IMG/VR virus record: IMGVR_UViG_3300027770_000025
Span: 1 to 64,000 of that record
DNA length: 64,000 nucleotides
Strand: one strand, 5' to 3'
The notes under the pieces were generated by a model, which ran no database searches, was not told where the DNA came from, and worked only from the letters and a program-made list of their open reading frames with translations. Position numbers and translations under genes: made by a program. This document shows positions 6,001 to 53,992 of this stretch, piece by piece. The number at the start of each line of letters is the position of its first letter. The stretch's first letter is position 1.

Positions 6001-6868
6001 CTGATGTTCCTGCTGATCCTGAAGTTCCAGAAGAACCATCTGCTCCTGATGTTCCCGAAGAACCATCTGCTCCTGAAGTTCCAGAAGATCCTGCTGCTCC
6101 TGAAGTTCCAGAAGTTCCAGAAGATCCTGCTGATCCTGATGTTCCTGCTGATCCTGATGTTCCAGAAGAACCATCTGCTCCTGATGTTCCCGAAGAACCA
6201 TCTGCTCCTGAAGTTCCAGAAGATCCTGCTGCTCCTGAAGTTCCAGAAGATCCTGCTGCTCCTGATGTTCCTGCTGATCCTGATGTTCCAGAAGAACCAC
6301 TTGCTCCTGAAGTTCCAGAAGATCCACTTGCTCCTGATGTTCCAGAAGATCCACTTGCTCCTGATGTTCCAGAAGATCCACTTGCCCCTGAAGTTCCCGA
6401 AGAACCACTTGCTCCTGATGTTCCCGAAGAACCACTTGCTCCTGAAGTTCCTGCTGATCCTGATGTTCCCGAAGAACCGTTTGCTCCTGATGTTCCCGAA
6501 GAACCGTTTGCTCCTGATGTTCCCGAAGAACCACTTGCTCCTGATGTTCCCGAGGAACCTGCTGCTCCTGATGTTCCCGAGGAACCTGCTGCTCCTGATG
6601 TTCCCGAGGAACCTGCTGCTCCTGATGTTCCCGAAGAACCACTTGCTCCTGAAGTTCCTGCTGATCCTGATGTTCCCGAAGAACCATTTGCTCCTGAAGT
6701 TCCCGAAGAACCGTTTGCTCCTGATGTTCCCGAAGAACCTGCTGCTCCTGATGTTCCCGAAGAACCTGCTGCTCCTGATGTTCCCGAGGAACCTGCTGCT
6801 CCTGATGTTCCCGAAGAACCACTTGCTCCTGAAATACCACTAGTTCCACTGCTTCCACTTCCCGTTCC
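1..6868 (-). repeat. 9-nt period coding repeat (e.g. GGAACTAGT, GGATCAGCA, GGAACTTCA) interrupted at ~980-1330
   Basis: Directly visible tandem 9-mers. Unit composition switches near 4320, from GAS/GAN/GEN/GAD+GSS to GTS/GSA. Confidence 0.95.
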
Positions 6869-7798
6869 TCCTGATATAGTTATTGTGGTATATCCGCTAG
6901 AATCAGTTACAGACGAAACGCCAGATCCAGTAAAGTTTAGACCAGTAACACCTACTCCTATCTGGGATCCACTAGAATAAGTATTTATAGCAGATCCTGA
7001 TCCCCCTGATCCACCAGGTATTGTAACCGTTACCGTATTGTATTGATCCCCAGTTTCAGTTACTGTAACACCAGCACCGGTAAATCCGACATACCAAGCT
7101 CCGTTGAAATGCTGTCCCGTTTGTCCAATGATTACTGGAACATAATCAGAAATTGCAAGTACGTCTATATTATAAGCAGCCTCTGCTATACCAGCTGGTA
7201 GATCCGGATATACATCATTCGAAACAGCATTTTGATATGTCCTATAATCAGATTGCTGAGATATTGCACTATAAGTAGCATTAGTAGGTACTCTATTAAG
7301 AGAACTGTATGCACCATCCTCATCATAAGTACAGAAGAAATTAATGTATTGATAAGATGGTTTATCGGTTATTTTGTTAATTACAAAGGTATTAAATACC
7401 CCCGAAATAGGATTAAATGATCCAGCATCTGTTGCTATGTTTGTAACTAAAAAACCCTCCAATAAATCAGCAGTTGTATAAATGCCGTTTACCTCAAGAT
7501 AAGTTCCTTCACAATAAAATACGCCGTCACCACACGATGTGGTAATGGTAACACCAGTATTAGTTGCTGTTCCATTGGCGGACATTACGAATGAAGAAGC
7601 ACCGTAATTAACAGAAATTACGGTAGTTGATGAGGGAATTCCTGTACCTGTTACAGCAAGACCTGGTATAATGAGATTAATATTAGATACGCTAGTAACT
7701 ACATTACTTCCGTTTGATACGTTTCCTGTTATCTGTGGTCCGTTGGTAAAAAATTCAGGTATAAATAATTGACCGGTTATTCTAGGTTGACTCCCCAT
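1..7798 (-). CDS. Giant Gly-X-Y (Ser/Thr-rich) repeat fibre protein, >=2599 aa, 3' end outside window
   Basis: ATG at 7798 (MGSQPRITGQLFIPEFF...). The frame was spot-checked at 7798, ~2580, ~1370 and position 4 and stays in phase. ~310-aa unique N-terminus, then GTS/GSA/GSS/GAS/GAN triplets, with a ~120-aa globular insert at ~980-1330. Absent from the ORF track because no stop lies in the window; the track's ELQ/QDQQ ORFs are its shadows. Confidence 0.9.
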   Translation of the reverse strand, partial: MGSQPRITGQLFIPEFFTNGPQITGNVSNGSNVVTSVSNINLIIPGLAVTGTGIPSSTTVISVNYGASSFVMSANGTATNTGVTITTSCGDGVFYCEGTYLEVNGIYTTADLLEGFLVTNIATDAGSFNPISGVFNTFVINKITDKPSYQYINFFCTYDEDGAYSSLNRVPTNATYSAISQQSDYRTYQNAVSNDVYPDLPAGIAEAAYNIDVLAISDYVPVIIGQTGQHFNGAWYVGFTGAGVTVTETGDQYNTVTVTIPGGSGGSGSAINTYSSGSQIGVGVTGLNFTGSGVSSVTDSSGYTTITISGGTGSGSSGTSGISGASGSSGTSGAAGSSGTSGAAGSSGTSGAAGSSGTSGANGSSGTSGANGSSGTSGSAGTSGASGSSGTSGAAGSSGTSGAAGSSGTSGAAGSSGTSGASGSSGTSGANGSSGTSGANGSSGTSGSAGTSGASGSSGTSGASGSSGTSGASGSSGTSGASGSSGTSGASGSSGTSGASGSSGTSGSAGTSGAAGSSGTSGAAGSSGTSGADGSSGTSGADGSSGTSGSAGTSGSAGSSGTSGTSGAAGSSGTSGADGSSGTSGADGSSGTSGSAGTSGASGSSGTSGASGSSGTSGASGSSGTSGANGSSGTSGANGSSGTSGSAGTSGASGSSGTSGASGSSGTSGASGSSGTSGSAGTSGASGSSGTSGENGSSGTSGSAGTSGASGSSGTSGSAGTSGANGSSGTSGASGSSGTSGADGSSGTSGANGSSGTSGASGSSGTSGADGSSGTSGSAGTSGAAGSSGTSGADGSSGTSGADGSSGTSGADGSSGTSGSAGTSGASGSSGTSGSAGTSGENGSSGTSGADGSSGTSGSAGTSGASGSSGTSGASGSSGTSGASGSSGTSGSAGTSGASGSSGTSGENGSSGTSGSAGTSGASGSSGTSGSAGTSGANGSSGTSGASGSSGTSGASGSSGTSGENGSSGTSGSAGTSGVSGSSGTSGSAGTSGANGSSGTSGASGSSGTSGENGSSGTSGSAGTSGASGSSGTSGSAGTSGANGSSGTSGASGSSGTSGVSGSSGTSGENGSSGTSGSAGTSGASGSSGTSGSAGTSGANGSSGTSGASGSSGTSGADGSSGTSGADGSSGTSGSAGTSGASGSSGTSGSAGTSGANGSSGTSGSAGTSGVNGSSGTSGTSGTSGTSGSAGTSGTSGTSGTSGTSGSSGTSGTSGTSGTSGTSGTSGTSGTSGSAGTSGTSGTSGTSGTSGSSGTSGTSGSAGTSGTSGSAGTSGTSGSAGTSGTSGTSGSAGTSGTSGTSGTSGTSGSAGTSGVNGSSGTSGTSGTSGTSGSAGTSGTSGTSGSAGTSGTSGTSGSAGTSGSAGTSGTSGTSGTSGSAGTSGSAGTSGVNGSSGTSGTSGTSGSAGTSGTSGTSGTSGTSGTSGSAGTSGTSGSAGTSGTSGSAGTSGTSGTSGTSGTSGSAGTSGTSGSAGTSGTSGTSGTSGTSGSAGTSGTSGSAGTSGTSGTSGTSGTSGTSGSAGTSGTSGSAGTSGTSGTSGTSGTSGSAGTSGTSGSAGTSGTSGTSGTSGTSGSAGTSGTSGTSGTSGTSGSAGTSGTSGSAGTSGTSGTSGTSGTSGTSGSAGTSGTSGTSGTSGTSGSAGTSGTSGSAGSAGSSGKTGSSGSSGTSGSAGTSGTSGTSGSAGTSGTSGSAGTSGTSGSAGTSGTSGSSGTSGTSGSAGTSGTSGTSGSAGTSGIAGLDGTAGSSGTSGNSGSAGTSGVNGSSGTSGTSGTSGTSGSAGTSGTSGSAGTSGTSGTSGTSGTSGSAGTSGTSGTSGTSGTSGSAGTSGSAGTSGTSGTSGTSGTSGTSGTSGTSGSAGTSGSAGTSGTSGTSGTSGSAGTSGSAGTSGTSGTSGTSGTSGTSGTSGSAGTSGTSGSAGTSGTSGTSGSAGTSGTSGTSGTSGTSGSAGTSGSAGTSGSAGTSGTSGTSGTSGSAGTSGSAGTSGTSGTSGTSGTSGTSGTSGSAGTSGTSGSAGTSGTSGTSGTSGTSGTSGTSGTSGTSGTSGSAGTSGTSGTSGTSGTSGSAGTSGTSGSAGTSGTSGTSGTSGTSGSAGTSGTSGTSGTSGTSGTSGTSGSAGTSGTSGSSGTSGSSGSSGTSGSSGSSGTSGAQGSQGDPGIDGANSGRWETNNPPEMGSGIIIGDNANFADTTSIDISDSSLTGAYTGWFNALDANQAAGKPSRLQITQVNDTSVFGIFTVGNLFYTVLNNFWTIPLTFVVGNGQWGGTETYSVSWMSDGAAGSSGTSGTSGTSGSAGTSGTSGTSGTSGTSGSAGTSGTSGSAGSAGSSGKTGSSGSSGTSGTSGTSGTSGSAGTSGTSGSAGTSGTSGTSGSAGSAGTSGTSGTSGSAGTSGTSGTSGTSGSAGTSGTSGTSGTSGTSGTSGTSGSAGTSGSAGSAGTSGTSGTSGTSGSAGTSGTSGSAGTSGTSGTSGTSGTSGSAGTSGTSGSAGTSGTSGTSGTSGTSGTSGTSGTSGTSGSAGTSGTSGTSGTSGTSGSAGTSGTSGSAGTSGTSGSAGTSGTSGTSGTSGTSGSAGTSGTSGSAGTSGTSGTSGTSGTSGTSGSAGT

Positions 7799-7810
7799 GT
7801 TTCTTTTATT

Positions 7811-10180
7811 TTAAAATTGCGCTCTTATATTTCTATCACCTGTTGAAAGAGCAGCCCAAACAAATACATTAGGCGTAGAAGTAAGTGTCATTGTTGCATT
7901 TATAGTTGCCCCTGCTGTTGTATAAACTCTCCAAACGGGAGCATATGAATTATAGATTGCATCATTCTGTCCTGCCCCGTTTGCTGATGATTGCGGTGTT
8001 GTTAGTGTGTATGTACTATTCATGGAGTCAGAAATAAGCATGCTCATGAGTTGAACATCACCACCAGAAGGGGCTACTATAGTTGAACCTGTTGCAGTAA
8101 CTGAAGAAGATGTAAATCCTAAGGAGTAAGCTGCTGAAGATCCTGAGGATGATCCGCTGTTCGCGGTAGCTACTGAGAATGAGTTTGCATCTATATAGGT
8201 AATGGTACCATTAAAGTTATCAGCATTTGCATTTCTTACTATGATCATATCTCCATTACTTCTTCCGTGAGAGGTGTGGGTAATCGTTAATGTTGTTGTT
8301 GATCTAGTCCACGAAAGTCCAGTATAAACTGTTGAACTAGATTCCATCCATATTTGCGCGTTTCCTGAAAGATATGTTCTGTACCTGGAAACCGTATTAT
8401 ATATGGTAGAGGATCCTCCAGATGCGTTTGATCCAGTAGGACCGGTAGGACCAGTTATACTAACTCCCGAAGTTCCTGATGATCCCGAGGCTCCCTGTAC
8501 TCCGAAATTTCCCGTTATTGAAAAACTCCATGACGCATAGGTATTACCCGCATTGCTGGCTGAAGTAACATTTATCGTTAAAGATGTTCCTGAGAATGCG
8601 GTGATGTCGCCTTCCATAAAGTTGTCGGCTACTGCAAAGGCTCTAACTCTCTCACCTACTTGGAATGCAGTTTGTGTATTTGATAAGTTTGTTGTCCATG
8701 TTTTACTTCCTGATCCTACTATAATATTAGAAGTAGTTGAAGTTAATCCATAATATCCTATACCTTGTGCTCCTGAAGTTCCTGCTGATCCTGAAGAACC
8801 TGAAGTTCCGCTAGTTCCTGATGTACCACTAGATCCTGAAGTTCCGCTAGTTCCTGATGAACCGTTAGAGCCTGATGTTCCACTAGATCCATTAACTCCT
8901 GATGTTCCACTAGATCCAGAAATTCCAGTGTAACCCTGAAGATTAACATTCCATACGCTGTAAGGATTTCCTGAGCCTATTTCATAACTACATAAAATAG
9001 TCATAGATCCCGTACCTGAATTATATGCTGTTACTAATCCAACAAATAATCCTACGGAGTTATTATAAACAGACACCGTTTCACCACCGGTAGAATTATA
9101 AGAAAGTCCAGTCCCAACAGTGATAGTTACACTATTTCCTACGGTTGGTATTGTCGTTGTGCTAACACTGGTTGTTTGATATAAACTTGCTCCATTAACC
9201 CCCGATGTTCCACTAGATCCGGAAGATCCTGATGAGCCAGAAGATCCTGATGTTCCTGAAGTCCCGGAAGATCCTGATGATCCTGATGATCCCGATGATC
9301 CCGAAGTTCCGCTAGTTCCAGATGATCCATTAGAACCCGATGTTCCTGATGAGCCACTAGAACCTGATGTTCCTGATGAACCGCTAGATCCAGATCTTCC
9401 TGATGATCCTGATGATCCTGATGATCCCGAGGTTCCGCTAGTTCCAGATGATCCATTAGAACCCGATGTTCCTGATGAACCGTTAGAACCGGATGTTCCT
9501 GATGACCCATCAATACCAGATGTTCCTGATGAACCGCTAGATCCAGAGCTTCCTGCTGATCCTGAAGTTCCTGCTGATCCTGAAGTTCCACTAGTTCCAG
9601 AGGAACCATCAACACCAGATGTTCCCGACGAACCGCTAGATCCAGAGGTTCCTGATGATCCTGAGGTACCACTAGTTCCTGAAGTTCCTGATGTTCCAGC
9701 TGATCCTGAAGATCCTGAAGATCCTGAAGATCCGCTAGTTCCTGAAGATCCATCAACACCGGATGTTCCTGATGAACCACTAGACCCAGAGCTTCCTGAA
9801 GTTCCACTAGTTCCTGCTGATCCTGAAGTTCCGCTAGTTCCTGCTGATCCTGAAGTTCCGCTAGTTCCTGCAGACCCTGAAGATCCACTAGATCCTGATG
9901 ACCCTGAGGTTCCACTAGTTCCTGAAGATCCTGAAGAGCCATCAAAACCACTAGTTCCTGAAGATCCATATGCCGGACCTTGAGGTCCTTGTGGACCCAC
10001 AGGTCCAGATGGACCGGTTACCCCTTCTATATAAGGTAGATCGTTCCATGGTTTTTGGCCATCCCCAATTTTTAATCTTCCTGTGTCTGATTCAACCCCA
10101 GGCTCTCCGAGCATCAAAACCGGATCATTATAAGACCAGTTTATCGAAAAGTCCCTTCTTAATAATATTCTGTATGGCAT
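7811..10180 (-). CDS. Fibre protein: Mtd_N/hyaluronidase-type N-terminal domain, G-S-S/G-T-S repeat, two tandem beta modules, C-terminal domain
   Basis: N-terminus RILLRRD..W...DPVL..GEPG.ESDTGRLKIGDG...W..LPY; ~270 aa of Gly-X-Y; two related ~85-aa modules ending YSVWNVNLQG and YASWSFSITG. Confidence 0.8.
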   Translation of the reverse strand: MPYRILLRRDFSINWSYNDPVLMLGEPGVESDTGRLKIGDGQKPWNDLPYIEGVTGPSGPVGPQGPQGPAYGSSGTSGFDGSSGSSGTSGTSGSSGSSGSSGSAGTSGTSGSAGTSGTSGSAGTSGTSGSSGSSGSSGTSGVDGSSGTSGSSGSSGSSGSAGTSGTSGTSGTSGSSGTSGSSGSSGTSGVDGSSGTSGTSGSAGTSGSAGSSGSSGSSGTSGIDGSSGTSGSNGSSGTSGSNGSSGTSGTSGSSGSSGSSGRSGSSGSSGTSGSSGSSGTSGSNGSSGTSGTSGSSGSSGSSGSSGTSGTSGSSGSSGSSGSSGTSGVNGASLYQTTSVSTTTIPTVGNSVTITVGTGLSYNSTGGETVSVYNNSVGLFVGLVTAYNSGTGSMTILCSYEIGSGNPYSVWNVNLQGYTGISGSSGTSGVNGSSGTSGSNGSSGTSGTSGSSGTSGTSGTSGSSGSAGTSGAQGIGYYGLTSTTSNIIVGSGSKTWTTNLSNTQTAFQVGERVRAFAVADNFMEGDITAFSGTSLTINVTSASNAGNTYASWSFSITGNFGVQGASGSSGTSGVSITGPTGPTGSNASGGSSTIYNTVSRYRTYLSGNAQIWMESSSTVYTGLSWTRSTTTLTITHTSHGRSNGDMIIVRNANADNFNGTITYIDANSFSVATANSGSSSGSSAAYSLGFTSSSVTATGSTIVAPSGGDVQLMSMLISDSMNSTYTLTTPQSSANGAGQNDAIYNSYAPVWRVYTTAGATINATMTLTSTPNVFVWAALSTGDRNIRAQF

Positions 10181-44729: not shown

Positions 44730-45722
44730 TTAAGCTAGAACACCAACTTTTTCTAAACTTATCTGAATCTGTTCAATGATCTGATAGGGGTTTGCGTTAG
44801 AAGCCGGTCTTCTATCTTCAAGATACCCTTTCTTATTATCGATGGTTGCTTGGGGTATTCTAATAGAAGCACCTCTGTCAGCTACACCATAAGAAAACTT
44901 ATCTATGTGTTGCGTCTCATGAAGACCAGTTAGTCTCTGATCATTATCAGATCCGTAAGCTTTCATGTGATCATTTCTTCTCTCATCAAACACTTCAAAT
45001 ATTCTCTCAAATACACTCCAATCTCCAGAATTTCTCATTTCGTCTGTTGAGAAGTTAGTATGTAAACCTGAACCGTTCCAATCACCTTTTAAAGGCTTAG
45101 GGTGGTATTCTACAGTAACCCCAAACTCTTCTGTTATTCTCTCTAGAAGATATCTAGCAATCAATAATTGATCTGCTGCATCAACACCAGTACCAAAAAT
45201 TTGAAATTCCCATTGCCCTATAAGAACCTCTGCGTTAATTCCTGTTATATCCAAACCAGCTTCCAGACAAACATCTAAATGTTTTTCTACTATTTGTCTT
45301 GCGGATACGTTTTCTGTTCCAACTGCACAATAGTATTTTCCTTGTGGCTCTTGTCCTGCTCTAAATCCTAACGGAACTCCACATTGGGACAAAATATACT
45401 CCTGTTCAAACCCCCACCAATTATCTTTGTTATCTTCTAAAAGATGCCTATGATTAGACTCATGCGGGGTTAAATCAGGATTCATCACCTCACATAAAAC
45501 AAGATAAGCATTCTTTCTCTCTGGATCTTTGATAACTTTAACTGGCTTTAACGCACAATCAGATTTTTTCCCCTCTGCTTGTCTTGTAGATGATCCATCA
45601 AAACTCCAAATTGGCAATGCATCAGGAACATAAATATTGTCAAGGATCTTTGTTTTAGACCTTAGATTTGGCTCCGGCTCATAACCATCCAACCAGATGT
45701 ATTCGTACTTGTACTTATTCAT
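44730..45722 (-). CDS. glnII: Glutamine synthetase type II
   Basis: EYIWLDG, LRSKTK, WSFDGSST.QA, GFEQEY, NAEV..GQWEFQ, GDWNGSG.H.NFS, RLTG.HET, YLEDRRPASN. Confidence 0.95.
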   Translation of the reverse strand: MNKYKYEYIWLDGYEPEPNLRSKTKILDNIYVPDALPIWSFDGSSTRQAEGKKSDCALKPVKVIKDPERKNAYLVLCEVMNPDLTPHESNHRHLLEDNKDNWWGFEQEYILSQCGVPLGFRAGQEPQGKYYCAVGTENVSARQIVEKHLDVCLEAGLDITGINAEVLIGQWEFQIFGTGVDAADQLLIARYLLERITEEFGVTVEYHPKPLKGDWNGSGLHTNFSTDEMRNSGDWSVFERIFEVFDERRNDHMKAYGSDNDQRLTGLHETQHIDKFSYGVADRGASIRIPQATIDNKKGYLEDRRPASNANPYQIIEQIQISLEKVGVLA

Positions 45723-46385: not shown

Positions 46386-46419
46386 ATTGTTATATGTTTT
46401 CTTTATCCCAAGTTATGAG

Positions 46420-46492
46420 ATCCTATAGAGGGATTCGAACCCCCGACATTCTCATTAAAATGAGATGCTCTAACCAGCTGAGCTAATGTAGA
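46420..46492 (-). pseudogene. Degenerate tRNA-Lys(TTT)-like
   Basis: Good D and T arms, but the anticodon loop is only 6 nt (TTTTAA) and the acceptor stem is mispaired. Confidence 0.65.
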
Positions 46493-46518
46493 AAAAAGTT
46501 TCGGGATAAAAAAATATT

Positions 46519-46668
46519 TTATAAAATATCTTCCTGAATTGTGTAATTTATTATGTCATGAATTTCTATCATCCATGACATAGCTTCTTCATATGTTATT
46601 CCGGTTAACCCTTCTACAGGAACAGGGGGATATGATGAGATATTAATTACGCTGTAAGTTGTTTCCAT
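46519..46668 (-). CDS. Small hypothetical protein, 49 aa (METTYSVINISSYPPV...)
   Basis: ATG just after the stop of 46670; fills the gap. Not in the ORF track. Confidence 0.55.
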   Translation of the reverse strand: METTYSVINISSYPPVPVEGLTGITYEEAMSWMIEIHDIINYTIQEDIL

Positions 46669-46669
46669 A

Positions 46670-47467
46670 TTAGCTGAATGTTAGTGTTAATGTTTGTGTC
46701 TGTGCCCCTATCGTACCCCCAATTCCACCCCAGTTTGCATTATTAACGAATGGTCTCAATGCAGCTGTGCTAGCTGCATCACAGCTGAGAGTGTTTGAAA
46801 ATTCAACCACATTTGCTGGAACTGGAGGAGTACCATAACGACATCCAGTTCCAACAAGCCAGGTATTAGCTCCGATAGTAACGCTGACTGTGGTACCGTT
46901 TCTTAGATTGGTTGCTAGTGTTTGAACCTTTATTGGGTCAGATACATTATATACGGGCGAGCCCGAAAGGGAGCTTGTAAACGTAAAGTTTGTGTAGCTG
47001 CCTGTTAGTGATGCCCTAAATGCTGTCCATGCATTTTCTATTGCTGTACCTGGACTTGTGCTATATGTAAAAAGTTGGGAAAACGTTACCTGTACTTGTC
47101 CAGAGAAAAGTCCGTAATTATTTGTATCCAACCATCCAGTTGCTCCTGCTGTTGTTGTTAAATTCCCCGGGCTCCCTGGCAATCTATTAACTACCGCTAA
47201 AAGTTGGGCTTCTGATGTTCCTGCTGTTTTCCAAAAAGTGGGAACATCAGCAAGGGCAAACCCAGTTCCGCCACCAGTTGTTCTCCCTGCTAACCCTCTT
47301 GTTGTGGTATCTGATGTGATTAAATAAACACCAGTGTCATCGACACCTCCGTACCATCCCCCTGTACTAACATCCACATTGCCGGCAGAATATTGCAAAG
47401 TTTTCATCTGGGTAGCACCAGACTCTGCAGTTCCCCCTGGGTTATATTTGAATATGTAAGTTGCCAT
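46670..47467 (-). CDS. Thr/Gly-rich probable virion protein
   Basis: Beta-rich, charge-poor composition; late motif at 47489. Confidence 0.65.
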   Translation of the reverse strand: MATYIFKYNPGGTAESGATQMKTLQYSAGNVDVSTGGWYGGVDDTGVYLITSDTTTRGLAGRTTGGGTGFALADVPTFWKTAGTSEAQLLAVVNRLPGSPGNLTTTAGATGWLDTNNYGLFSGQVQVTFSQLFTYSTSPGTAIENAWTAFRASLTGSYTNFTFTSSLSGSPVYNVSDPIKVQTLATNLRNGTTVSVTIGANTWLVGTGCRYGTPPVPANVVEFSNTLSCDAASTAALRPFVNNANWGGIGGTIGAQTQTLTLTFS

Positions 47468-47524
47468 TTAATATTGTTAACTATTTTTCTATATATTTTT
47501 TTTATTAGGAATATACGGGTATCG

Positions 47525-47597
47525 TGGCTTCAGAAGGATTCGAACCCTCACCAACTCGTTCGAAGCGAGGTATGCTAATCCATTACACTATGAAGCC
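47525..47597 (-). tRNA. tRNA-Arg(TCG)
   Basis: GGCTTCA/TGAAGCC acceptor, CTCG-CTTCGAA-CGAG, GAGGG-TTCGAAT-CCTTC. Confidence 0.85.
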
Positions 47598-47600
47598 ATG

Positions 47601-47631
47601 AAAAAGGACTCTGTATTTATCAGAGTCCTTT
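47601..47631 (-). terminator. Terminator closing the protein+ncRNA unit
   Basis: Perfect 11-bp AAAGGACTCTG/CAGAGTCCTTT stem ending in a U-tract on minus. Confidence 0.8.
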
Positions 47632-47972
47632 CCATTTAATATTTCGGTATCTGAGATGATAAAGAGCATAGACTAAAACCAAATCTAAGTCAATATCAAA
47701 GACCCTTTCCTACTACAAAGTCAAAGTCAAAAACTAAGTCTCATTTTCGTTAGCCAATTTTTCGCATGCGATAACCTGTCTAACTGGTGAGTTCTATCTC
47801 AGTTTTTAGAATTTGTAGGAAAGGCGGGATATGATTATACCCACCCGGAGGCGGATAAGATTTGTAGTTTATAAATATAGGGGCATTCAGCCAGCATATA
47901 AAAAATCCCTACCATCCCAGATCAAATGAATGTGGAATCATCTTGTGACTATCCACACCCAACCCAATTCCT
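47632..47972 (-). ncRNA. Candidate ~340-nt structured RNA with pseudoknot and hexamer-periodic tracks
   Basis: No long ORF in a gene-dense genome. Crossing helices 47704-13/47815-24 (10 bp) and 47651-57/47796-802 (7 bp), nested GTTAG/CTAAC and CTCA/TGAG, two 5' hairpins. Confidence 0.65.
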
Positions 47973-48890
47973 TTATTCAGCTACGTCCTTTAAGAACATA
48001 TCGATCACCTCCTGAAATCTAGGATCGATACCTATTCTCAAAGCTGCTGTTTTTTTAATTTCATTCTGACGCTCTTCTTCAAACAAATGCGAAGCTTGAC
48101 GGTAGTTAGCCTGCCATTCCTCTTTTGCCTTGCTGTAATCGCTAATGACTTTTTGATTCACCTCATTAACAGAAGCTTCCTTAACCGCATTATCTTTAGC
48201 AATTCTAGCGTTCTCGGTGGTTACTAAATTCTTAACCTTCGCCTTGAAGTAGTTAACACGTTGCTCGTGAGCTCTATGAACTCCAGCAAGTTGTTCATGT
48301 AAATCACCTAACTCTTCAGACGTGTGATGTACACTAACCTTAAGTGGAGTTTTCTTTCCAGACTCTACTTCGATCCACTCTAGAGTTTTAAGTGTAGGTA
48401 ACTCTGATCTTAAGTTATCTAATTTACCCCCTTTGTGAATGAATTGTCCTACGTGAGATGCAAAAGCTTCCGCTTCTAAATACTCGTTGTATTCGGCTAA
48501 AGAAAGTTGGCTCCAAGCCCAATCTTCGTTAACTGAATCATCTATTTCTGCACTTTGAAGTTCACCGCATTTAGGAATCTCGATATCAAATTCCATGCGG
48601 GTGTTTCTAAGTCCATTAAGCATCTCTTCTTTGGCCTTAATGTTTTCCATTAAAAAAGCCTGGGTAGCGTGAAGCTTTGATTTATCTGCTAGCAGATCAA
48701 CCACGTTTTCTGGCATCTTTTTGCCCGGAGTTTCGATATAGGTCTCCTCTCCTATTTTAAGGACCTTTTCAACGTTGTTGATGTCTCTTAATTTAAAAGA
48801 GATGTCTCTTGATCTTTGGTTGCAAAGATTAGAGATTGACTGTGCTTGAGACATTGATAGTCCCTTCGAAGCTAAAGAATTTTTTCTCAT
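47973..48890 (-). CDS. Uncharacterised helical/coiled-coil protein upstream of the candidate ncRNA
   Basis: 305 aa, E/K/A-rich, N-terminus GLSMSQAQSISNLC; no recognisable catalytic motif. Confidence 0.85.
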   Translation of the reverse strand: MRKNSLASKGLSMSQAQSISNLCNQRSRDISFKLRDINNVEKVLKIGEETYIETPGKKMPENVVDLLADKSKLHATQAFLMENIKAKEEMLNGLRNTRMEFDIEIPKCGELQSAEIDDSVNEDWAWSQLSLAEYNEYLEAEAFASHVGQFIHKGGKLDNLRSELPTLKTLEWIEVESGKKTPLKVSVHHTSEELGDLHEQLAGVHRAHEQRVNYFKAKVKNLVTTENARIAKDNAVKEASVNEVNQKVISDYSKAKEEWQANYRQASHLFEEERQNEIKKTAALRIGIDPRFQEVIDMFLKDVAE

Positions 48891-48928
48891 ATGGTATAAA
48901 AAATTAAAGTATTTTCTTATTTATAGCG

Positions 48929-48962
48929 CAAACTTATGGTATTGTTACGGGATAAAAAAATA
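48929..48962 (-). promoter_or_regulatory. Bacteroidetes-type promoter for the 47973 gene
   Basis: Minus strand TTTTTTTATCCCG-N11-TAAGTTTG. Confidence 0.7.
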
Positions 48963-48976
48963 TTAAGTGATTTTTT

Positions 48977-49369
48977 TTAAATTACTTCGTTTTCAGATCC
49001 TCCGAAGAAATATAGGATTGATCTAATGTTTCGTTGTTCGTTGCTTAAGGCTTCAGCCTTAATTTTTTCGATAGCCATATAACCTTGTACAGATAAAAGG
49101 GTGTTTCTCTTGTCCATCAATTCAGTGTTTGTTCTAGATACATCAATAAAAGCAGCCTCTCTTGATTCTGCATTGCTGTAAATCTTCTTCCCGTTGTCAT
49201 CAACCTGTGAATTAATTTCAGTTTTAATTACAGATTCGATCTGAGAGATCTCATTAGAGATGTTTTGGGTCTGTTCGTTGTAATCTAAAATCATTCCTTG
49301 TTTTTCAAAAATCGCGTTAGGGATTTCCGATAGTCTTTCTGCAAGACTTGCTAATCTTTCTTTGTTCAT
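48977..49369 (-). CDS. Hypothetical coiled-coil protein
   Basis: Helical hairpin with GKKIYSNAESR. Confidence 0.7.
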   Translation of the reverse strand: MNKERLASLAERLSEIPNAIFEKQGMILDYNEQTQNISNEISQIESVIKTEINSQVDDNGKKIYSNAESREAAFIDVSRTNTELMDKRNTLLSVQGYMAIEKIKAEALSNEQRNIRSILYFFGGSENEVI

Positions 49370-49371
49370 GT

Positions 49372-49821
49372 TTATAAAATTTGTTTATTAATTGTTCCAT
49401 TTATCTCATAATCCCATCTAACCCTTATGCATGTTTCTGGTCTTTTACAGAGCTTAAGATAGAGATTTATATAACCCATGATATGGCAACACCCTATGGG
49501 ATTTGCAGAGTGTGTATAACATTGTGGCAGATCTTGTCCGGTAGATTTAGAATACTCTATTAACCATTTAGCAGCATCTAGACCGGTCTTTTCTTTTATC
49601 TTTGAATAGTCAATTACGTAAGTTTCCCTAACCTCTTCAACATAATGGCGGGTAGCAGAAAAATCTAGATCGTGATCTAGTGTTATAATTTCAATGTTAT
49701 CCAATCCGGTTTTTTCTACCAGATCGATAAACTCTTTGAAGTTCTTAACCACAACCCATTCGGTATCAGCTGATGGTGATTCTAATGGTGTTCTCTGGTC
49801 GTCTAGATAGATTGAAATCAT
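49372..49821 (-). CDS. Cyclic-phosphate-processing receiver-domain protein
   Basis: IYLDD.R.P, W.VVKN..EF, ITLDHDL, KTG.D.AKWL, HSANP.G. Confidence 0.75.
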   Translation of the reverse strand: MISIYLDDQRTPLESPSADTEWVVVKNFKEFIDLVEKTGLDNIEIITLDHDLDFSATRHYVEEVRETYVIDYSKIKEKTGLDAAKWLIEYSKSTGQDLPQCYTHSANPIGCCHIMGYINLYLKLCKRPETCIRVRWDYEINGTINKQIL

Positions 49822-50828: not shown

Positions 50829-52007
50829 TTATCTTGCTTTTGGGTTTAATATAAAGGTGATCTTAGTGAAATCTATAAAATACCACCAAGAAAACCCAGC
50901 ATTATGAATAGCAGATTCCATATCGCTTCTAATATCTAATGCCTCAATTTCTAGTGTTACTATAATTTGTTCTAGTGAAGGATCAATTGTTGATAACCTA
51001 TTGGTAAATGTTTCTATATCCTGAATATTCTTAATAGAAAAAATTAGGTGCGAAGGGTGCTCTATTTTTTTATTAAACCAAAAATCGTGATCGAAATAGA
51101 GTTCCCCTATTCTATTTCTGTCCCTCGCATTTAGATTGCTGTTATAGTACTCCACTCTTGCTCTGTATGTTATACTACCAAGATTTGAATAGTACATCTG
51201 ATATAAAGAATCAAAAGAACCGTCATAGTGATAATGTATAGATTCTAGGGTTTTCCTGCTTTTTCTGCTTTCTGCCTTAGTCATCATACCTTTATCCTCT
51301 GCTTCTATATCGGATAAAGAAACTCCCCTGCTCTGCCACATAGGTCCTGATACAGATCCCACTCTGTAGGTATAATCATGTAGTGTTCTAGGTAGGCATA
51401 GCATTTTACCACACTCCTCGTAATTTAGAATTTTTAGAATATCAGCGCTCATGCTATGTGTGTACTCGCCTTCTCTTGCTATCTCCCCCCTATGTAATAT
51501 AGCAGATTTTCTGAAACATCTGGCGTCTCCCATTACGGAATGAACATTGTTTTTTAGACCCTCTATAAAATTAGACGATCCGTTGTATTTTATATACTTA
51601 GCACCTATTGAATGCCCGGTTACATTTCCATCTTTCATTACTGATGTTGCTCCTATAATAGATAATTCGGGGAACCTTTCAAGATGAACTAAGTAACATT
51701 CAAGTAGCTTAGGATACATAATATCATCAGAATCTATAGTCAGTATGAATTCTCCACTGGATTCTATTAATGGCAAATTCCAGTAATAGTGATTTTTCCA
51801 TTTAGGATAGATCACTCTTACTCTGCTATCATTTTTTTCGAGATTCTTCAAAGTCTCCAGAACTAAAGGATCCTCGCTGAAGTCGTCGCACACAAGCCAT
51901 TCCCAATTGGTGTGGGTTTGGTTTTTTATTGATTCGTAGACCTTTTCTAAATCATCTATATAATTATAGAATCCTGTGAGTATGCTAAATTTGGTTTTTT
52001 TCTCCAT
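50829..52007 (-). CDS. GT2 glycosyltransferase
   Basis: SIKNQTHTNWEWLVCDDFS, GEFILTIDSDD. Confidence 0.85.
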   Translation of the reverse strand: MEKKTKFSILTGFYNYIDDLEKVYESIKNQTHTNWEWLVCDDFSEDPLVLETLKNLEKNDSRVRVIYPKWKNHYYWNLPLIESSGEFILTIDSDDIMYPKLLECYLVHLERFPELSIIGATSVMKDGNVTGHSIGAKYIKYNGSSNFIEGLKNNVHSVMGDARCFRKSAILHRGEIAREGEYTHSMSADILKILNYEECGKMLCLPRTLHDYTYRVGSVSGPMWQSRGVSLSDIEAEDKGMMTKAESRKSRKTLESIHYHYDGSFDSLYQMYYSNLGSITYRARVEYYNSNLNARDRNRIGELYFDHDFWFNKKIEHPSHLIFSIKNIQDIETFTNRLSTIDPSLEQIIVTLEIEALDIRSDMESAIHNAGFSWWYFIDFTKITFILNPKAR

Positions 52008-53117
52008 TTAATATTCGTAATTTGTTAGCTGCTTAAATTTATGTAACGCACTTCCTATAACCTGGTGCATGTCGTAGTATTTATACTCTGCCAATCTACC
52101 GCCAAAGATATATTTGGGCGATATCTCGTTTGAAAGCTTTTGGTAATCTATATACCTTAGATTGTTCTCCGAGTTATTCACCGGATAATATCTTTCCTTA
52201 CCAGGTTCCCATGAATCCGGATATTCCCTAGTTATTATTGTGGAATCACTTTTTGTAAATTCGAAGTGCTTGTGTTCGCAGATTCTGGTGTATGGTATTT
52301 CCTCCTCTGTGTAGTTAATTAAAGCATTACCCTGATAATCGGGAATATTTAGTTCTTCTGTTTCGAATCTTAGACTTCTATATTCTAGTGGACCAAATTG
52401 ATACCCAAAGAATTCATCAATAGCTCCGGTGAAGATTATCGTTTTAGCCTCGCTCTCGAATTGCTCTTTATTCTCAAAGAAATCAACGCCAAGTCTAACC
52501 TCAACACCTTCCTGCATTTTCTCGATCATCTTGGTATATCCGCCAATAGGTATACCCTGATAGGTGTCATTAAAATAATTATCATCAAAGGTTAATCTAA
52601 TAGGAAGTCTTCTGATAATCGAAGAAGGCAATTCTTTAGGATCTCTACCCCATTGCTTCTTAGTGTACCCGTATATGAATTTTTTATAGATCTCTTCCCC
52701 AACCTGAGATAGTATCCATTCCTCTAGATTTTTAGGTGAATCTGAATGTATCTTTACTGATTCTAGGATTTTGTTAGCCTCTTCAGGAGTCTTAACACCA
52801 AATAACTGATATAGAGTAAATAAGTTTATAGGGAAAGAATATAAGTCCCCTTTATAACTCACTTTAGGCCTGTTTACGAAGTTATTAAAGCTTGCGAATC
52901 GGTTTACATAGTTCCAGATCCGATCGTCCGATGTGTGGAATATATGTGGTCCGTATTTGTGTACATTAATACCGTTAACATTCTCGCTATAAGCATTTCC
53001 TGCATTGTGAGACCTTTTATCTATTATTAAACATTTGTACCCTTTTTCGTTTGCTTGCTGTGCAAAGGTGGATCCGAATAAACCGGATCCTACTATAACG
53101 AAATCGTATTTATACAT
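52008..53117 (-). CDS. glf: UDP-galactopyranose mutase
   Basis: IVGSGLFG, HKYGPHIFHT, YTKKQWG, YQGIP..GY, LEYRSL, GRLAEYKYYDM. Confidence 0.96.
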   Translation of the reverse strand: MYKYDFVIVGSGLFGSTFAQQANEKGYKCLIIDKRSHNAGNAYSENVNGINVHKYGPHIFHTSDDRIWNYVNRFASFNNFVNRPKVSYKGDLYSFPINLFTLYQLFGVKTPEEANKILESVKIHSDSPKNLEEWILSQVGEEIYKKFIYGYTKKQWGRDPKELPSSIIRRLPIRLTFDDNYFNDTYQGIPIGGYTKMIEKMQEGVEVRLGVDFFENKEQFESEAKTIIFTGAIDEFFGYQFGPLEYRSLRFETEELNIPDYQGNALINYTEEEIPYTRICEHKHFEFTKSDSTIITREYPDSWEPGKERYYPVNNSENNLRYIDYQKLSNEISPKYIFGGRLAEYKYYDMHQVIGSALHKFKQLTNYEY

Positions 53118-53128
53118 TTCTTTATTTT

Positions 53129-53992
53129 TTAAAACCATTTATTTTCTGATTCAAAGTAATATTTATAGTCATTAAGATAGAAATATTTCCTCGGGTTTAG
53201 GTATTGACTAACTCCTTCTGCATTACCTCTATATAAACACACCCACATAGAAACATTACAGCTGTTTAATATCAACTTAGAGCATCTACTTAAGATTAGA
53301 GAGATTGCCATAAATTCAACACCAAAATTAGTCCTCCCCCCATTTTCTATAGTCCATACCACTTGCCATTCGTAGCTCTTGTTTATTACTGGGAGTTCCG
53401 GTATAAATATAGAATCGGGATATATGGACATCGCATGATCTAAAAATTCTTTCTCGTCAGTTTGAATCAAGATTTTATATTTTGGGTTCTCTTTAAGTAA
53501 GATTCCTATCTTATTGATGTATTCTTCATAACTAGGTGGATTAGCCTCCATTAACTTATCATTTCCCCTATAATATACACCTATAGTTTCCTCTGTATTG
53601 ATTTCATATTTTGCTAGAAAAGAGTTCATTTTTTCTAGCACTCTTTCTGATGGATCAAAATATGAATTTATTATCGGTAATATCTCTTTGTAGTTTATTC
53701 TTTTATATGGGCTGAATTGACCAAGGTATGTAAAATCACCATCTTCATATTTCATAAAATCTGTAAATAGTATAGTTTTACCGACCCCTGTTATTTCTGA
53801 TCCACGAGATTTAAAAAATTCACACCATATATCTGAATTGATTGATTCGTCTTCCTTATACCATTCCATTAAAGATGCCGTGGATATAAAGGGGAATTCA
53901 CATTCCTCGTTATATTTCGCTATTATCTGGTTTAATGTAACTGTGCATGTGCTAAAAAAACCGGCAGTAAAAACTGGTGATAAATTAGACAT
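53129..53992 (-). CDS. Fucosyltransferase-like (NodZ/GT23-type)
   Basis: GFFS, IGVYYRGNDK, QTD, LSRC..LI...NVS. Confidence 0.6.
   Translation of the reverse strand: MSNLSPVFTAGFFSTCTVTLNQIIAKYNEECEFPFISTASLMEWYKEDESINSDIWCEFFKSRGSEITGVGKTILFTDFMKYEDGDFTYLGQFSPYKRINYKEILPIINSYFDPSERVLEKMNSFLAKYEINTEETIGVYYRGNDKLMEANPPSYEEYINKIGILLKENPKYKILIQTDEKEFLDHAMSIYPDSIFIPELPVINKSYEWQVVWTIENGGRTNFGVEFMAISLILSRCSKLILNSCNVSMWVCLYRGNAEGVSQYLNPRKYFYLNDYKYYFESENKWF

What the first reader, a model, noticed from the sequence alone, without database searches (positions are those of the whole stretch)
47662..47740. Two tracks with G at every sixth nucleotide inside the candidate RNA
Seen on the minus strand: GACTTA GTTTTT GACTTT GACTTT GTAGTA GGAAAG, a one-nt slip, then GTCTTT GATATT GACTTA GATTTG GTTTTA GTCTAT GCTCTT. 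Consensus is roughly G(A/U)(C/U)UUN. The U-rich tracks flank the 3' strand of the 10-bp helix and have no obvious pairing partner. Degenerate sequence with strict phase suggests selection for spacing rather than recent slippage. Inference: a landing array for an oligomeric protein binding 6 nt per subunit, with the upstream protein the obvious candidate. A template role or a short alternating peptide (VFDIDLDLVLVY) is less likely.
Basis: partly seen in the sequence, partly recalled or inferred. Interest (0 to 1): 0.75.

Follow-up and report, generated by a model that had tools for sequence, protein, structure and literature searches.

The report
Phage RNA with hexamer-phased U tracks
The G-every-sixth-base pattern is real and is the most conserved part of an undescribed, expressed non-coding RNA of freshwater jumbo phages, where two single-stranded U-rich tracks held between helices most likely act as a multi-site landing platform for a protein that has not been identified.

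Summary
Observation confirmed. On the minus strand G falls at 47740/34/28/22/16 and at 47703/97/91/85/79/73/67. Only 9 of 200,000 shuffles of the intergenic region do as well.

The tracks lie in a structured RNA of about 310 nt (about 47645-47957, minus strand), between an orphan 305-aa gene and tRNA-Arg. A covariance model finds one copy directly downstream of that gene's homologue in every locus with enough downstream sequence: 58 representative loci, 4 found from the RNA side, and 8 divergent loci. Other neighbouring genes are not conserved.

Helices P1 and P3 covary strongly. Inside the tracks the spacing is exactly 6 nt in 57-58 of 58 homologues. Each unit has a conserved G, two variable bases, then conserved U's, so the pattern has period 6, not 3. 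The gap between the tracks varies (18, 19 or 20 nt), so there is no common reading frame.

In two lake metatranscriptomes the RNA is covered and both flanking genes are not.

The unit (G-U/A-C/U-U-U-U-G) resembles the published Bacillus CspB site GTCTTTG/T. My best reading is a phased platform for a single-strand RNA-binding protein. The partner is not shown: it may be a host cold-shock or S1-type protein, or the linked 305-aa protein. No Rfam family matches.

The parts
47645..47957 (-). Full extent of the expressed non-coding RNA, about 310 nt. The 5' end is near 47954-47957 and the 3' end near 47644-47650.
   Evidence: Metatranscriptome contigs cover 47644-47812 (X18, no differences), 47647-47954 (X20, one difference) and 47650-48101 (X21, a relative). 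An adapter read-through marks a fragment end at 47957. Both flanking ORFs have zero depth in X18 and X20. Fold z-scores are -3.8 for this stretch and -6.2 for the whole gap.
47627..47828 (-). Conserved core covered by covariance model R1: P1, P2, P3/P4, both tracks and the tail.
   Evidence: Scores 187 bits here, with a single copy in the 348-kb genome. There is one hit in each of 58 representative homologous loci. No Rfam family matches.
47906..47922 (-). 5' strand of the long-range closing helix P0. It pairs with 47649-47665.
   Evidence: A 17-bp helix in the window's minimum-energy fold. The own fold of 57 of 58 homologues joins the 5' extension to the tail by 7 or more pairs. The duplex has a mean z of -2.7 against shuffles, below -2 in 81% of homologues. 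Not tested by formal covariation.
47838..47857 (-). Small G+C-rich hairpin about 10 nt before the conserved ACCG/P1 start.
   Evidence: A hairpin of different sequence sits at the same place in most homologues. No promoter motif is conserved at a fixed distance.
47815..47824 (-).
   Evidence: All 9 modelled pairs show changes on both sides and 99.8% of cells are paired across 58 sequences. Slid-partner controls give 32-54%.
47788..47801 (-). P2 hairpin (UGAG-AUAGAA-CUCA), almost invariant in the main clade.
   Evidence: Mean pairwise identity 0.92. Relatives' RNA contigs pile up on this segment at depth 100-240. Some clades have a longer hairpin here instead.
47749..47784 (-). P3 helix, a conserved internal region (ACAGGUUA ... 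AAUUGG) and the variable P4 hairpin.
   Evidence: 7 of 11 pairs show changes on both sides. G-U alternating with A-U fixes the minus strand as the RNA strand.
47716..47740 (-). Track 1: four hexamer units plus a closing G, single-stranded between P3 and P1.
   Evidence: G is kept in 52-58 of 58 homologues at each phase position with 6-nt spacing in 57-58 of 58. Mean pairwise identity is 0.82, against 0.60 for the P1 strands.
47704..47713 (-). P1 3' strand (GUAGGAAAGG).
   Evidence: Covaries with 47815-47824. The distance from the G at 47722 (last full unit of track 1) to the G at 47703 (first of track 2) is 18, 19 or 20 nt in 30, 24 and 4 homologues.
47666..47703 (-). Track 2: six hexamer units starting with the near-universal GUCUUUG. 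It is single-stranded between P1 and P0 and ends in the conserved CUAU motif (window GUCUAUGC; family consensus GUCUAUAUA).
   Evidence: G is kept in 58, 55, 50 and 51 of 58 homologues, then becomes a purine. Spacing is 6 nt in 58 of 58. One divergent relative has one unit fewer.
47649..47665 (-). 3' strand of closing helix P0. The RNA-seq 3' ends lie just beyond it.
   Evidence: Modelled unpaired probability falls to 0.05 from alignment column 328 onward. Contig ends cluster at 47644-47650.
47601..47628 (-). Terminator-like hairpin plus U run, between the RNA and tRNA-Arg. It is outside the RNA as seen in RNA-seq.
   Evidence: Read directly from the sequence. It is not covered by the contigs of X18, X20 or X21.
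47524..47597 (-). tRNA-Arg(UCG), the next gene downstream.
   Evidence: About half of the homologous loci have tRNA genes within 3 kb.
47973..48890 (-). Orphan 305-aa protein gene (p305), the only gene that always accompanies the RNA.
   Evidence: Found in 80 of 80 loci, while other neighbours occur in 0-5 of 80. There are 764 clusters at 50% identity in metagenomes. No Pfam, PHROG or fold match. AF2 model pLDDT 86.6.

Best explanation
The two tracks are the working surface of a non-coding RNA of about 310 nt made by freshwater jumbo phages whose hosts are probably Bacteroidota.

A scaffold of helices (P0, P1, P2, P3/P4) holds two single strands by their ends. Each strand is built from 6-nt units with consensus G-(U/A)-(C/U)-U-U-U.

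I propose that each unit is one binding site for one module of a single-strand RNA-binding protein with a footprint of 6-7 nt. Four to seven modules would then load side by side in a fixed register. The RNA would either soak up that protein or concentrate it.

The best-fitting module is an OB fold of the cold-shock or S1 type supplied by the host. The linked protein p305 is the second candidate.

Shown here: the RNA, its structure, its expression, the conserved phase and the absence of coding.

Inferred: that a protein reads the phase.

Speculative: which protein, and whether the effect is sequestration or recruitment.
For: - A real structured RNA: P1 is 99.8% paired with 9 of 9 pairs changed on both sides, and P3 has 7 of 11 such pairs. 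Overall 97% of cells are paired, against 80% in shuffles and 32-54% in slid controls.
- Expressed: metatranscriptome contigs match 47644-47812 and 47647-47954 with 0 and 1 differences at depth 15-17, with zero depth on both flanking genes. Fragments from many relatives are also present.
- Phase under selection: G is kept in 50-58 of 58 homologues at nine positions, with exact 6-nt spacing. The tracks are better conserved (identity 0.82 and 0.70) than the helices (0.60-0.63).
- Persistence in distant relatives: eight divergent loci keep the tracks although P1 has a completely different sequence. The number of units changes by whole units.
- Not coding: the period of information is 6, not 3. The gap between tracks is 18, 19 or 20 nt. 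There is no conserved start codon.
- No nucleic-acid partner found: no covarying partner within the RNA and no antisense target of 13 nt or more in the phage genome.
- Match to a known protein preference: B. subtilis CspB prefers 5'-GTCTTTG/T-3', with C favoured at position 3 and T at positions 2, 4 and 6 (PMC1904285). It was crystallised with GUCUUUA (PMC7825780). Averaged over ten units in 58 sequences, the tracks match that consensus at its seven positions with frequencies 0.86, 0.44, 0.62, 0.85, 0.87, 0.80 and 0.79. The first unit of track 2 is GUCUUUG itself, at 0.91-1.00 per position.
- Host context: only 7% of ORFs have a Shine-Dalgarno-like motif (6% in random windows) and leaders are 52% A. 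One member lies on a Flavobacteriales MAG contig. Bacteroides has CSD and RRM proteins (controls) but lacks Hfq and CsrA (PMC13370968).
Against: - No binding was tested, and the partner is inferred from a consensus measured in vitro on a Bacillus protein. Cold-shock proteins have low sequence specificity.
- Independent monomers would not obviously need a strict 6-nt register. That argues for cooperative packing or for a protein with several modules.
- The phage encodes no CSD, Hfq, TRAP or RRM protein. A host partner is therefore needed, and the host is unknown.
- The strict linkage to p305 is not explained by a host-protein sponge.
- Thermodynamic folding leaves the tracks only about 43% unpaired on average, because they can pair loosely with A-rich linkers.
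- Invariant bases cannot show covariation, so a tertiary or intermolecular RNA contact is not excluded.
Confidence: 0.5

Rival explanations
1. The linked 305-aa protein p305 is the partner. It would assemble on the tracks, or on the conserved P2/P3 loops, to form a phage ribonucleoprotein, with protein and RNA inherited as one module.
For: - The RNA lies directly downstream of a p305 homologue in every locus with enough sequence: 58 representative loci, 4 loci found from the RNA side, and L273 plus 7 loci of distant protein clusters.
- No other neighbouring gene is conserved.
- The protein family is large, with 764 clusters at 50% identity, and has no other known role.
Against: - The protein is acidic (pI 5.7; 43 K+R against 51 D+E).
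- It has no known RNA-binding domain or fold.
- The RNA accumulates where the p305 mRNA is not detected.
- Linkage could equally reflect shared transcription or regulation in cis.
- The complex job was not folded, so nothing was tested.
Confidence: 0.2
2. The tracks are base-pairing seeds of a regulatory RNA. They would pair with A-rich sequences, such as the A-rich translation-start regions typical of Bacteroidota and of this phage, or a target with CAAA every six bases.
For: - Leaders in this genome are 52% A and lack Shine-Dalgarno motifs.
- Single strands next to helices are typical of seed regions.
- The tracks pair easily with A-rich segments in silico.
Against: - There is no antisense match of 13 nt or more in the phage genome, and the 9-12-mer hits are at chance level.
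- The conserved positions are G plus UUU, while the two bases after each G drift freely. A strict 6-nt register has no obvious role in pairing with varied leaders.
- Pairing with the RNA's own A-rich linker is no better than for shuffled tracks (mean z -0.35 and +0.13).
- Host transcripts could not be searched.
Confidence: 0.12
3. The tracks are structural RNA. They would form tertiary contacts (for example U-rich strands docking on helices or A-rich strands), join RNA copies into multimers, or take part in a switch in which the last unit of track 1 (GCCUUU) pairs with the P1 3' strand in place of P1.
For: - Both tracks are tethered at both ends inside a closed scaffold.
- Columns 266-271 can pair with columns 284-290 in 96% of cells.
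- AAAAACUGAG and CUUAGUUUUU are complementary in the main clade.
- From memory: large phage-associated RNAs found near tRNA genes, such as ROOL and GOLLD, form multimers.
Against: - No real covariation supports any such pairing. The variation in the alternative hairpin is explained by P1 covariation plus G-U tolerance.
- Some clades carry mismatches in the alternative helix (A opposite A).
- A 6-nt period fits no helical repeat.
Confidence: 0.12
4. The feature acts at the DNA level, or is a by-product. Options are promoter-like TTTG elements, primase or replication-origin signals, a small peptide gene, or a template for reverse transcription.
For: - TTTG belongs to the Bacteroidota promoter consensus (from memory).
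- Track 2 is stop-free in one frame in 57 of 58 homologues.
Against: - G-U pairs and covariation show selection at the RNA level on one strand, and the RNA is abundant.
- The stop-free frame follows from the motif itself. There is no conserved start codon and the frames of the two tracks differ.
- TAnnTTTG occurs only once among 58 upstream regions, at no fixed distance, and no promoter motif is conserved at a fixed distance.
- No reverse transcriptase is among the conserved neighbours.
Confidence: 0.05

Closest known systems
TRAP-binding sites in Bacillus trp leader RNAs: 9-11 (G/U)AG triplets separated by 2-3 nt and wrapped around an 11-subunit ring (from general knowledge)
   Same: A run of short conserved motifs at a fixed 5-6-nt spacing in single-stranded RNA, with free spacer bases and one motif per protein subunit.
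   Different: The motif here is G...UUU rather than GAG. There are two arrays of only 4-7 units, held between helices in a stand-alone RNA. The phage genome has no TRAP gene.
Cold-shock protein site: B. subtilis CspB consensus GTCTTTG/T, and the CspB-GUCUUUA crystal structure (PMC1904285, PMC7825780)
   Same: The unit consensus and its 6-7-nt length match, including C at position 3 and U at positions 4-6. GUCUUUG itself opens track 2 in nearly all members.
   Different: I know of no natural RNA with a phased array of such sites, and the literature searches here turned up none. The preference was measured in vitro on a Firmicute protein, and binding was not tested here. The phage has no CSD gene.
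Protein-sponge RNAs: CsrB/RsmZ (GGA motifs for CsrA) and CrcZ (A-rich motifs for Hfq/Crc) (from general knowledge)
   Same: A non-coding RNA that offers many copies of a short motif and is more abundant than its neighbouring genes.
   Different: Those motifs sit in hairpin loops or at irregular spacing, and their partners (CsrA, Hfq) are absent from Bacteroides (PMC13370968). Here the spacing is exact and the motif is U-rich.
Hexamer-phased promoter elements of negative-strand RNA viruses, such as the eight UN5 hexamers of Ebola virus PE2 (PMC7075260)
   Same: One conserved base every six nucleotides. In those viruses the phase matters because the nucleoprotein covers 6 nt per subunit. This is the clearest precedent for selection on a 6-nt register.
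   Different: That is the encapsidated genome of an RNA virus of eukaryotes. This is a small RNA of a DNA phage, and no nucleoprotein is known for it.
Small stable RNAs of unknown function in the phage T4 tRNA cluster, and large phage-associated RNAs near tRNA genes such as ROOL and GOLLD (from memory)
   Same: A phage-encoded stable non-coding RNA that often lies among tRNA genes and has no known function.
   Different: There is no sequence or structure match to any Rfam family. tRNA genes are absent within 3 kb in about half of the loci. None of those RNAs has hexamer tracks.
Type III toxin-antitoxin systems such as ToxIN, a protein gene with an adjacent repetitive RNA (from general knowledge)
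   Same: A two-part module of one protein gene and one adjacent non-coding RNA that contains repeats.
   Different: ToxI repeats are about 36 nt long and lie upstream of the toxin gene. Here the units are 6 nt and the RNA lies downstream. p305 shows no nuclease fold.

Membership tests
Any Rfam 15 family | A covariance-model score at or near the family's gathering threshold | tested here: not met
   Only tRNAs passed in the whole window. In 47550-48000 at E up to 10, the best non-tRNA score was 19 bits against a threshold of 107.
Structured non-coding RNA (generic) | Conserved helices supported by compensatory changes | tested here: met
   P1 has 9 of 9 pairs and P3 7 of 11 pairs with changes on both sides. 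97% of cells are paired, with 0 of 500 shuffles reaching the observed values.
Structured non-coding RNA (generic) | Transcribed and accumulating independently of the flanking genes | tested here: met
   RNA-library contigs cover 47644-47957 at depth 15-17, while flanking ORFs have zero depth in two runs. Caveat: these are unstranded assembled contigs.
Small protein-coding gene | A conserved start codon, one conserved frame, and period-3 conservation | tested here: not met
   There is no conserved start. The gap between tracks is 18, 19 or 20 nt. The lag-3 autocorrelation of information is -0.3 and the lag-6 value is +0.24 to +0.30.
TRAP-type binding array | (G/U)AG triplets with 2-3-nt spacers, and a TRAP protein in the system | tested here: not met
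   The motif is G-N-N-U-U-U. PF02081 is absent from the phage genome. The host was not testable.
CsrA or Hfq sponge RNA | GGA motifs in loops or A-R-N/AU-rich Hfq sites, and the partner present | tested here: not met
   There are no GGA arrays. The only Hfq-like hit is 14.6 bits, below the cut-off, and contains a stop codon. Bacteroides lacks Hfq and CsrA (PMC13370968).
Cold-shock-domain binding site | A pyrimidine-rich heptamer resembling GTCTTTG/T in single-stranded RNA | tested here: met
   Per-position match over ten units is 0.86, 0.44, 0.62, 0.85, 0.87, 0.80 and 0.79, compared with the consensus quoted.
Cold-shock-domain binding site | Measured binding by a CSD protein | not testable with these tools
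   The complex job was not folded, and the host and its proteins are unknown.
Type III toxin-antitoxin | Tandem repeats of about 34-36 nt upstream of an endoribonuclease toxin gene | tested here: not met
   The units are 6 nt and the RNA lies downstream of the gene. The protein model matches no nuclease fold.
Sigma-70 or Bacteroidota promoter array | A promoter motif conserved at a fixed distance | tested here: not met
   No motif is conserved at a fixed distance upstream of the core. TAnnTTTG was seen once in 58 sequences.

The most novel reading that the evidence does not exclude
A new kind of phage ribonucleoprotein. In one version an orphan protein family (p305, more than 700 clusters at 50% identity) polymerises in 6-nt register on two helix-tethered RNA tracks, a 'rule of six' particle in a DNA phage. 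In the other version the RNA is the first dedicated decoy for OB-fold RNA chaperones (cold-shock proteins or ribosomal protein S1), used by phages of Bacteroidota to take over a translation system that does not use Shine-Dalgarno pairing.
Probability: 0.3. Interest if true: 0.85.

Novelty: new variant of a known kind. Interest (0 to 1): 0.72.

Why it matters
- A new RNA family. It is widespread and expressed in lake communities, matches no Rfam family, and its best-conserved part is not a helix but two single strands with a strict 6-nt register.
- An unusual phage RNA. Most known bacterial and phage RNAs that bind several copies of a protein use irregularly spaced motifs, and I know of no phage non-coding RNA with a phased array.
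- A gap in Bacteroidota biology. These hosts lack Hfq and CsrA, and their RNA-binding proteins are only now being mapped. A natural high-avidity ligand could identify the protein that matters.
- A lead on an orphan protein. The strict pairing gives a first functional handle on p305, which is found in hundreds of jumbo-phage lineages.
- Directly testable. Gel shifts with three candidate proteins and a comparison of 6-nt against 1-3-nt insertions would settle the mechanism.

Tried and rejected
- **Public phage records:** neither the DNA nor the p305 protein has a match among GenBank phage records.
- **Rfam:** no family at gathering or relaxed thresholds.
- **RNAalifold on a plain MAFFT alignment:** failed because of gaps in P1 and returned only the alternative hairpin. 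A hand-set structure and a covariance model replaced it.
- **Loose DNA pattern in viral contigs:** mostly chance matches. Only 4 of 80 loci were the RNA.
- **Stricter pattern in bacterial genomes:** 1 of 80 loci was the RNA, on a Flavobacteriales MAG contig. A block of Burkholderiales hits was an unrelated conserved high-GC sequence that looks coding.
- **Antisense targets in the phage genome:** nothing above chance.
- **Pairing of the tracks with the A-rich linker and P2 region:** no better than for shuffled tracks. A column-pair scan found only pairings explained by invariant bases or G-U tolerance.
- **p305 fold:** Foldseek against PDB and BFVD and VIA-align against 48,000 chains gave only generic helical matches. 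The PDB sequence profile search gave nothing. The Atlas gave only 'hypothetical protein, Bacteroidota'.
- **Complex prediction (p305 plus the RNA core):** not folded by the tool, so it is no evidence either way.
- **Phage-encoded partners:** no CSD, Hfq, TRAP or RRM gene.
- **boxA resemblance:** the window's UGCUCUUUAUCA (47660-47671, minus strand) looks like a boxA antitermination element, but it is not conserved in homologues.
- **TATAAT at 47834-47839:** this is the 3' arm of a hairpin, not a conserved promoter.
- **Literature:** searches for a described phage RNA of this kind found none.
Full report
**Setting.** The window is the first 64 kb of a 348,582-bp virus record that CheckV rates complete. 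It has about 33% G+C and nearly all genes lie on the minus strand. The finding lies in a 375-nt gap (47598-47972). Upstream in the direction of transcription is a 305-aa ORF (47973-48890, here called p305). Downstream is tRNA-Arg(UCG) at 47524-47597. The DNA is held by many freshwater and lake metagenomes. Only 7% of ORFs of 150 aa or more have a Shine-Dalgarno-like motif upstream, the same as random windows, and their leaders are 52% A. This fits a Bacteroidota-type host. So do one family member on a Flavobacteriales MAG contig and the taxa of the protein's Atlas cluster.

**The observation.** G occupies every sixth base in two phases, with runs of 7 and 8. Of 200,000 shuffles of the intergenic region, 123 gave a run of 8 or more, and 9 also had a second run of 5 or more. 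On the transcribed strand the window's array is the only one of its kind in the genome. The four-unit matches on the other strand are near shuffle expectation. Runs of G at period 6 are common inside genes because of codon usage, so position in a non-coding gap matters. Homologues settle the question.

**A conserved RNA.** The p305 protein brought in 80 related loci from IMG/VR viral contigs, many from genomes of 320-370 kb. The DNA just downstream of the gene is conserved at 70-86% identity although the proteins are only about 50-65% identical. The best-conserved stretch is the finding itself.

I built covariance model R1 from 19 sequences with a hand-set structure. It finds exactly one copy, on the gene's strand and directly after the gene, in each of 58 non-redundant loci at 74-197 bits. 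It finds one copy in the whole genome.

The helices are well supported:
All 9 modelled pairs change on both sides and 99.8% of cells are paired.
- P3 has 7 of 11 pairs changed on both sides.
- Overall 97% of cells are paired, against 80% in shuffles and 32-54% when partners are slid.
- G-U pairs alternating with A-U pairs show that the RNA strand is the window's minus strand.

No Rfam family matches.

**Architecture.** From 5' to 3' the core has these parts:
- the P1 5' strand
- an A-rich linker
- hairpin P2 (UGAG-AUAGAA-CUCA, 0.92 identity)
- P3, with a conserved internal region and a variable hairpin P4
- track 1
- the P1 3' strand
- track 2
- a tail

The tail is not a terminator hairpin as I first thought. 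In the window it forms a 17-bp helix (P0) with a segment of the 5' extension, 47649-47665 pairing with 47906-47922. The own minimum-energy fold of 57 of 58 homologues joins the same two regions by 7 or more pairs. That duplex beats shuffled tails, with a mean z of -2.7. I did not test P0 by formal covariation.

Both tracks are therefore single strands tied down at both ends. Track 1 runs between P3 and P1. Track 2 runs between P1 and P0.

**Expression.** I laid four metatranscriptome runs on 46600-49400.
- In X18 and X20 the only covered stretch is the RNA. X18 has a contig at 47644-47812 with no differences (depth 15.4). X20 has a contig at 47647-47954 with one difference (depth 16.6). Both flanking ORFs have zero depth.
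- X21 covers a relative's copy over 47650-48101, running into the 3' end of p305, plus a short piece inside the p305 gene (48469-48649).
- X17 shows low, even coverage over the genes as well, with a modest peak on the RNA.
- Low-coordinate ends cluster at 47644-47650, and an adapter read-through marks a fragment end at 47957.
- The invariant P2/P3 segment reaches depth 100-240 from contigs of many relatives. Their loose ends carry those relatives' own P1 strands.

These are unstranded assembled contigs, so the ends are approximate. The RNA clearly accumulates far above the p305 mRNA in X18 and X20.

**The phase in homologues.**
- In the 58-sequence alignment G is kept at the five phase positions of track 1 in 53, 53, 52, 58 and 56 sequences. 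It is kept at the first four positions of track 2 in 58, 55, 50 and 51. The next positions are purines (G41/A16, G26/A31).
- The number of bases between successive phase positions is 6 in 58 of 58 sequences for eight intervals and in 57 of 58 for the other two.
- Within a unit the information content is high at G, low at the next two bases, and high at the following U's.
- The autocorrelation of information is positive at lag 6 and negative at lag 3.
- The tracks are better conserved (identity 0.82 and 0.70) than the helix strands (0.60-0.63) or the tail (0.44).
- The distance across the P1 strand is 18, 19 or 20 nt in 30, 24 and 4 sequences.

**Distant relatives.** On a Flavobacteriales MAG contig the protein is only 30% identical. 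P1 there has a wholly different sequence that still pairs. The tracks are almost unchanged, except that track 2 is one unit shorter.

A profile search of 1.84 billion representatives found 764 p305 clusters. I fetched eight loci for seven of the weakest full-length matches. Seven loci had downstream sequence, two of them with identical intergenic sequence, and the eighth contig ended at the gene. All seven have the RNA (37-64 bits) with hexamer tracks. Some G's are exchanged for A, and units such as GUCUUA and GUCUUU recur.

**Linkage.** Four further RNA copies found from the RNA side also have p305 directly upstream. No other neighbouring gene is conserved: each occurs in 0-5 of 80 loci. About half of the loci have tRNA genes within 3 kb, often in arrays.

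**What it is not.**
- Not a gene. No start codon is conserved, the frames of the two tracks differ in nearly half of the homologues, and conservation has period 6. The stop-free frame in track 2 follows from the motif itself.
- Not a repeat family. No other such array exists on the transcribed strand of the genome.
- Not an obvious antisense RNA. No complementary stretch of 13 nt or more exists in the genome.
- Not visibly paired within the RNA. Pairing with the A-rich linker is no better than for shuffled tracks. A scan of all column pairs found nothing with true covariation.

Two possible alternative pairings remain unproven. One is GCCUUU of track 1 with the P1 3' strand. The other is AAAAACUGAG with CUUAGUUUUU.

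**Mechanism.** A conserved base at an exact 6-nt spacing, free bases next to it, whole-unit changes in length, and no nucleic-acid partner together point to a reader with a 6-nt footprint, that is, protein modules packed side by side.

The unit consensus G-(U/A)-(C/U)-U-U-U followed by G is close to the in-vitro optimum of B. subtilis CspB, 5'-GTCTTTG/T-3'. CspB favours C at position 3 and T at positions 2, 4 and 6 (PMC1904285), and was crystallised with GUCUUUA (PMC7825780). GUCUUUG is the near-invariant first unit of track 2.

S1 domains have a similar OB fold (general knowledge). Ribosomal protein S1 carries six of them in one chain, which would explain a strict register. Translation in Bacteroidota does not rely on Shine-Dalgarno pairing (and general knowledge).

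The phage has no CSD, Hfq, TRAP or RRM gene, so such a partner would have to come from the host. Bacteroides has CSD and RRM proteins (controls) and lacks Hfq and CsrA (PMC13370968).

The other candidate is p305, on the strength of linkage alone. It is acidic (pI 5.7). It is confidently modelled (pLDDT 86.6) as a helical protein with two beta-hairpins. It matches no known fold or family.

My estimates:
- about 0.5 that the tracks are a phased protein platform
- within that, roughly 0.3 for a host OB-fold protein and 0.2 for p305

**Comparison with known systems.**
- In the way it would work, the nearest relatives are the TRAP-binding triplet arrays of Bacillus, sponge RNAs such as CsrB and CrcZ, and the hexamer-phased promoter elements of negative-strand RNA viruses (Ebola PE2, eight UN5 hexamers, PMC7075260).
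- In genomic context it recalls the small stable RNAs of the T4 tRNA cluster and the large phage RNAs found near tRNA genes (from memory).
- It meets the defining features of none of these families (see the membership table).

I rate it a new variant of a known kind: an undescribed RNA family whose arrangement of sites is new. It would become categorically new if p305 proves to polymerise on it.

Noticed in passing
window 1-10180 (minus strand), continuing at the far end of the 348-kb record: Giant ORFs (more than 2,599 aa open at the window start, then 789 aa) in a block of 44-48% G+C. G and C recur every ninth base for hundreds of repeats, which suggests a collagen-like Gly-X-Y protein. This is very unlike the 33% G+C of the rest of the genome.
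   Followed up: no
window 46419-46493 (minus strand): A tRNA-like gene for which ARAGORN reports an abnormal two-base anticodon ('tt'). Rfam's tRNA model scores it at 42 bits.
   Followed up: no
L020:2849-2926, L031:2677-2754, L070:5082-5156: Relatives carry suppressor-type tRNAs (anticodon UUA, which reads UAA; anticodon CUA, which reads UAG) just upstream of the p305 gene or downstream of the RNA. Some of these jumbo phages may therefore reassign a stop codon.
   Followed up: no
window 49372-49821 (minus strand): This 149-aa ORF matches the cyclic-phosphate-processing receiver domain (PF20274, E 2e-19). The family name points to processing of cyclic-phosphate RNA ends, and the gene lies two genes upstream of the RNA. 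It is present in only 2 of 80 related loci.
   Followed up: partly
window 47717-47722 with 47702-47708 (minus strand); alignment A3 columns 266-271 with 284-290: The last unit of track 1 (GCCUUU in most members) can pair with the 3' half of the P1 3' strand in 96% of cells, and this would compete with P1. It may be a conformational switch or only a side effect of composition. No independent covariation supports it.
   Followed up: partly
window 47660-47671 (minus strand): UGCUCUUUAUCA resembles the boxA antitermination element (UGCUCUUUAACAA, from memory). It is not conserved in homologues and lies mostly within helix P0.
   Followed up: yes
window 44730-45722 and 50829-53138 (minus strand): Auxiliary genes near the locus: a short glutamine-synthetase-like protein (330 aa), a family-2 glycosyltransferase and a UDP-galactopyranose mutase.
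   Followed up: no
L002-L081, about 30-45 nt upstream of the conserved ACCG: Many homologues share a short UAUAAACUA-like motif in the 5' extension of the RNA. It is partly complementary to the invariant GUCUAUAUA at the end of track 2. Its role was not resolved.
   Followed up: partly
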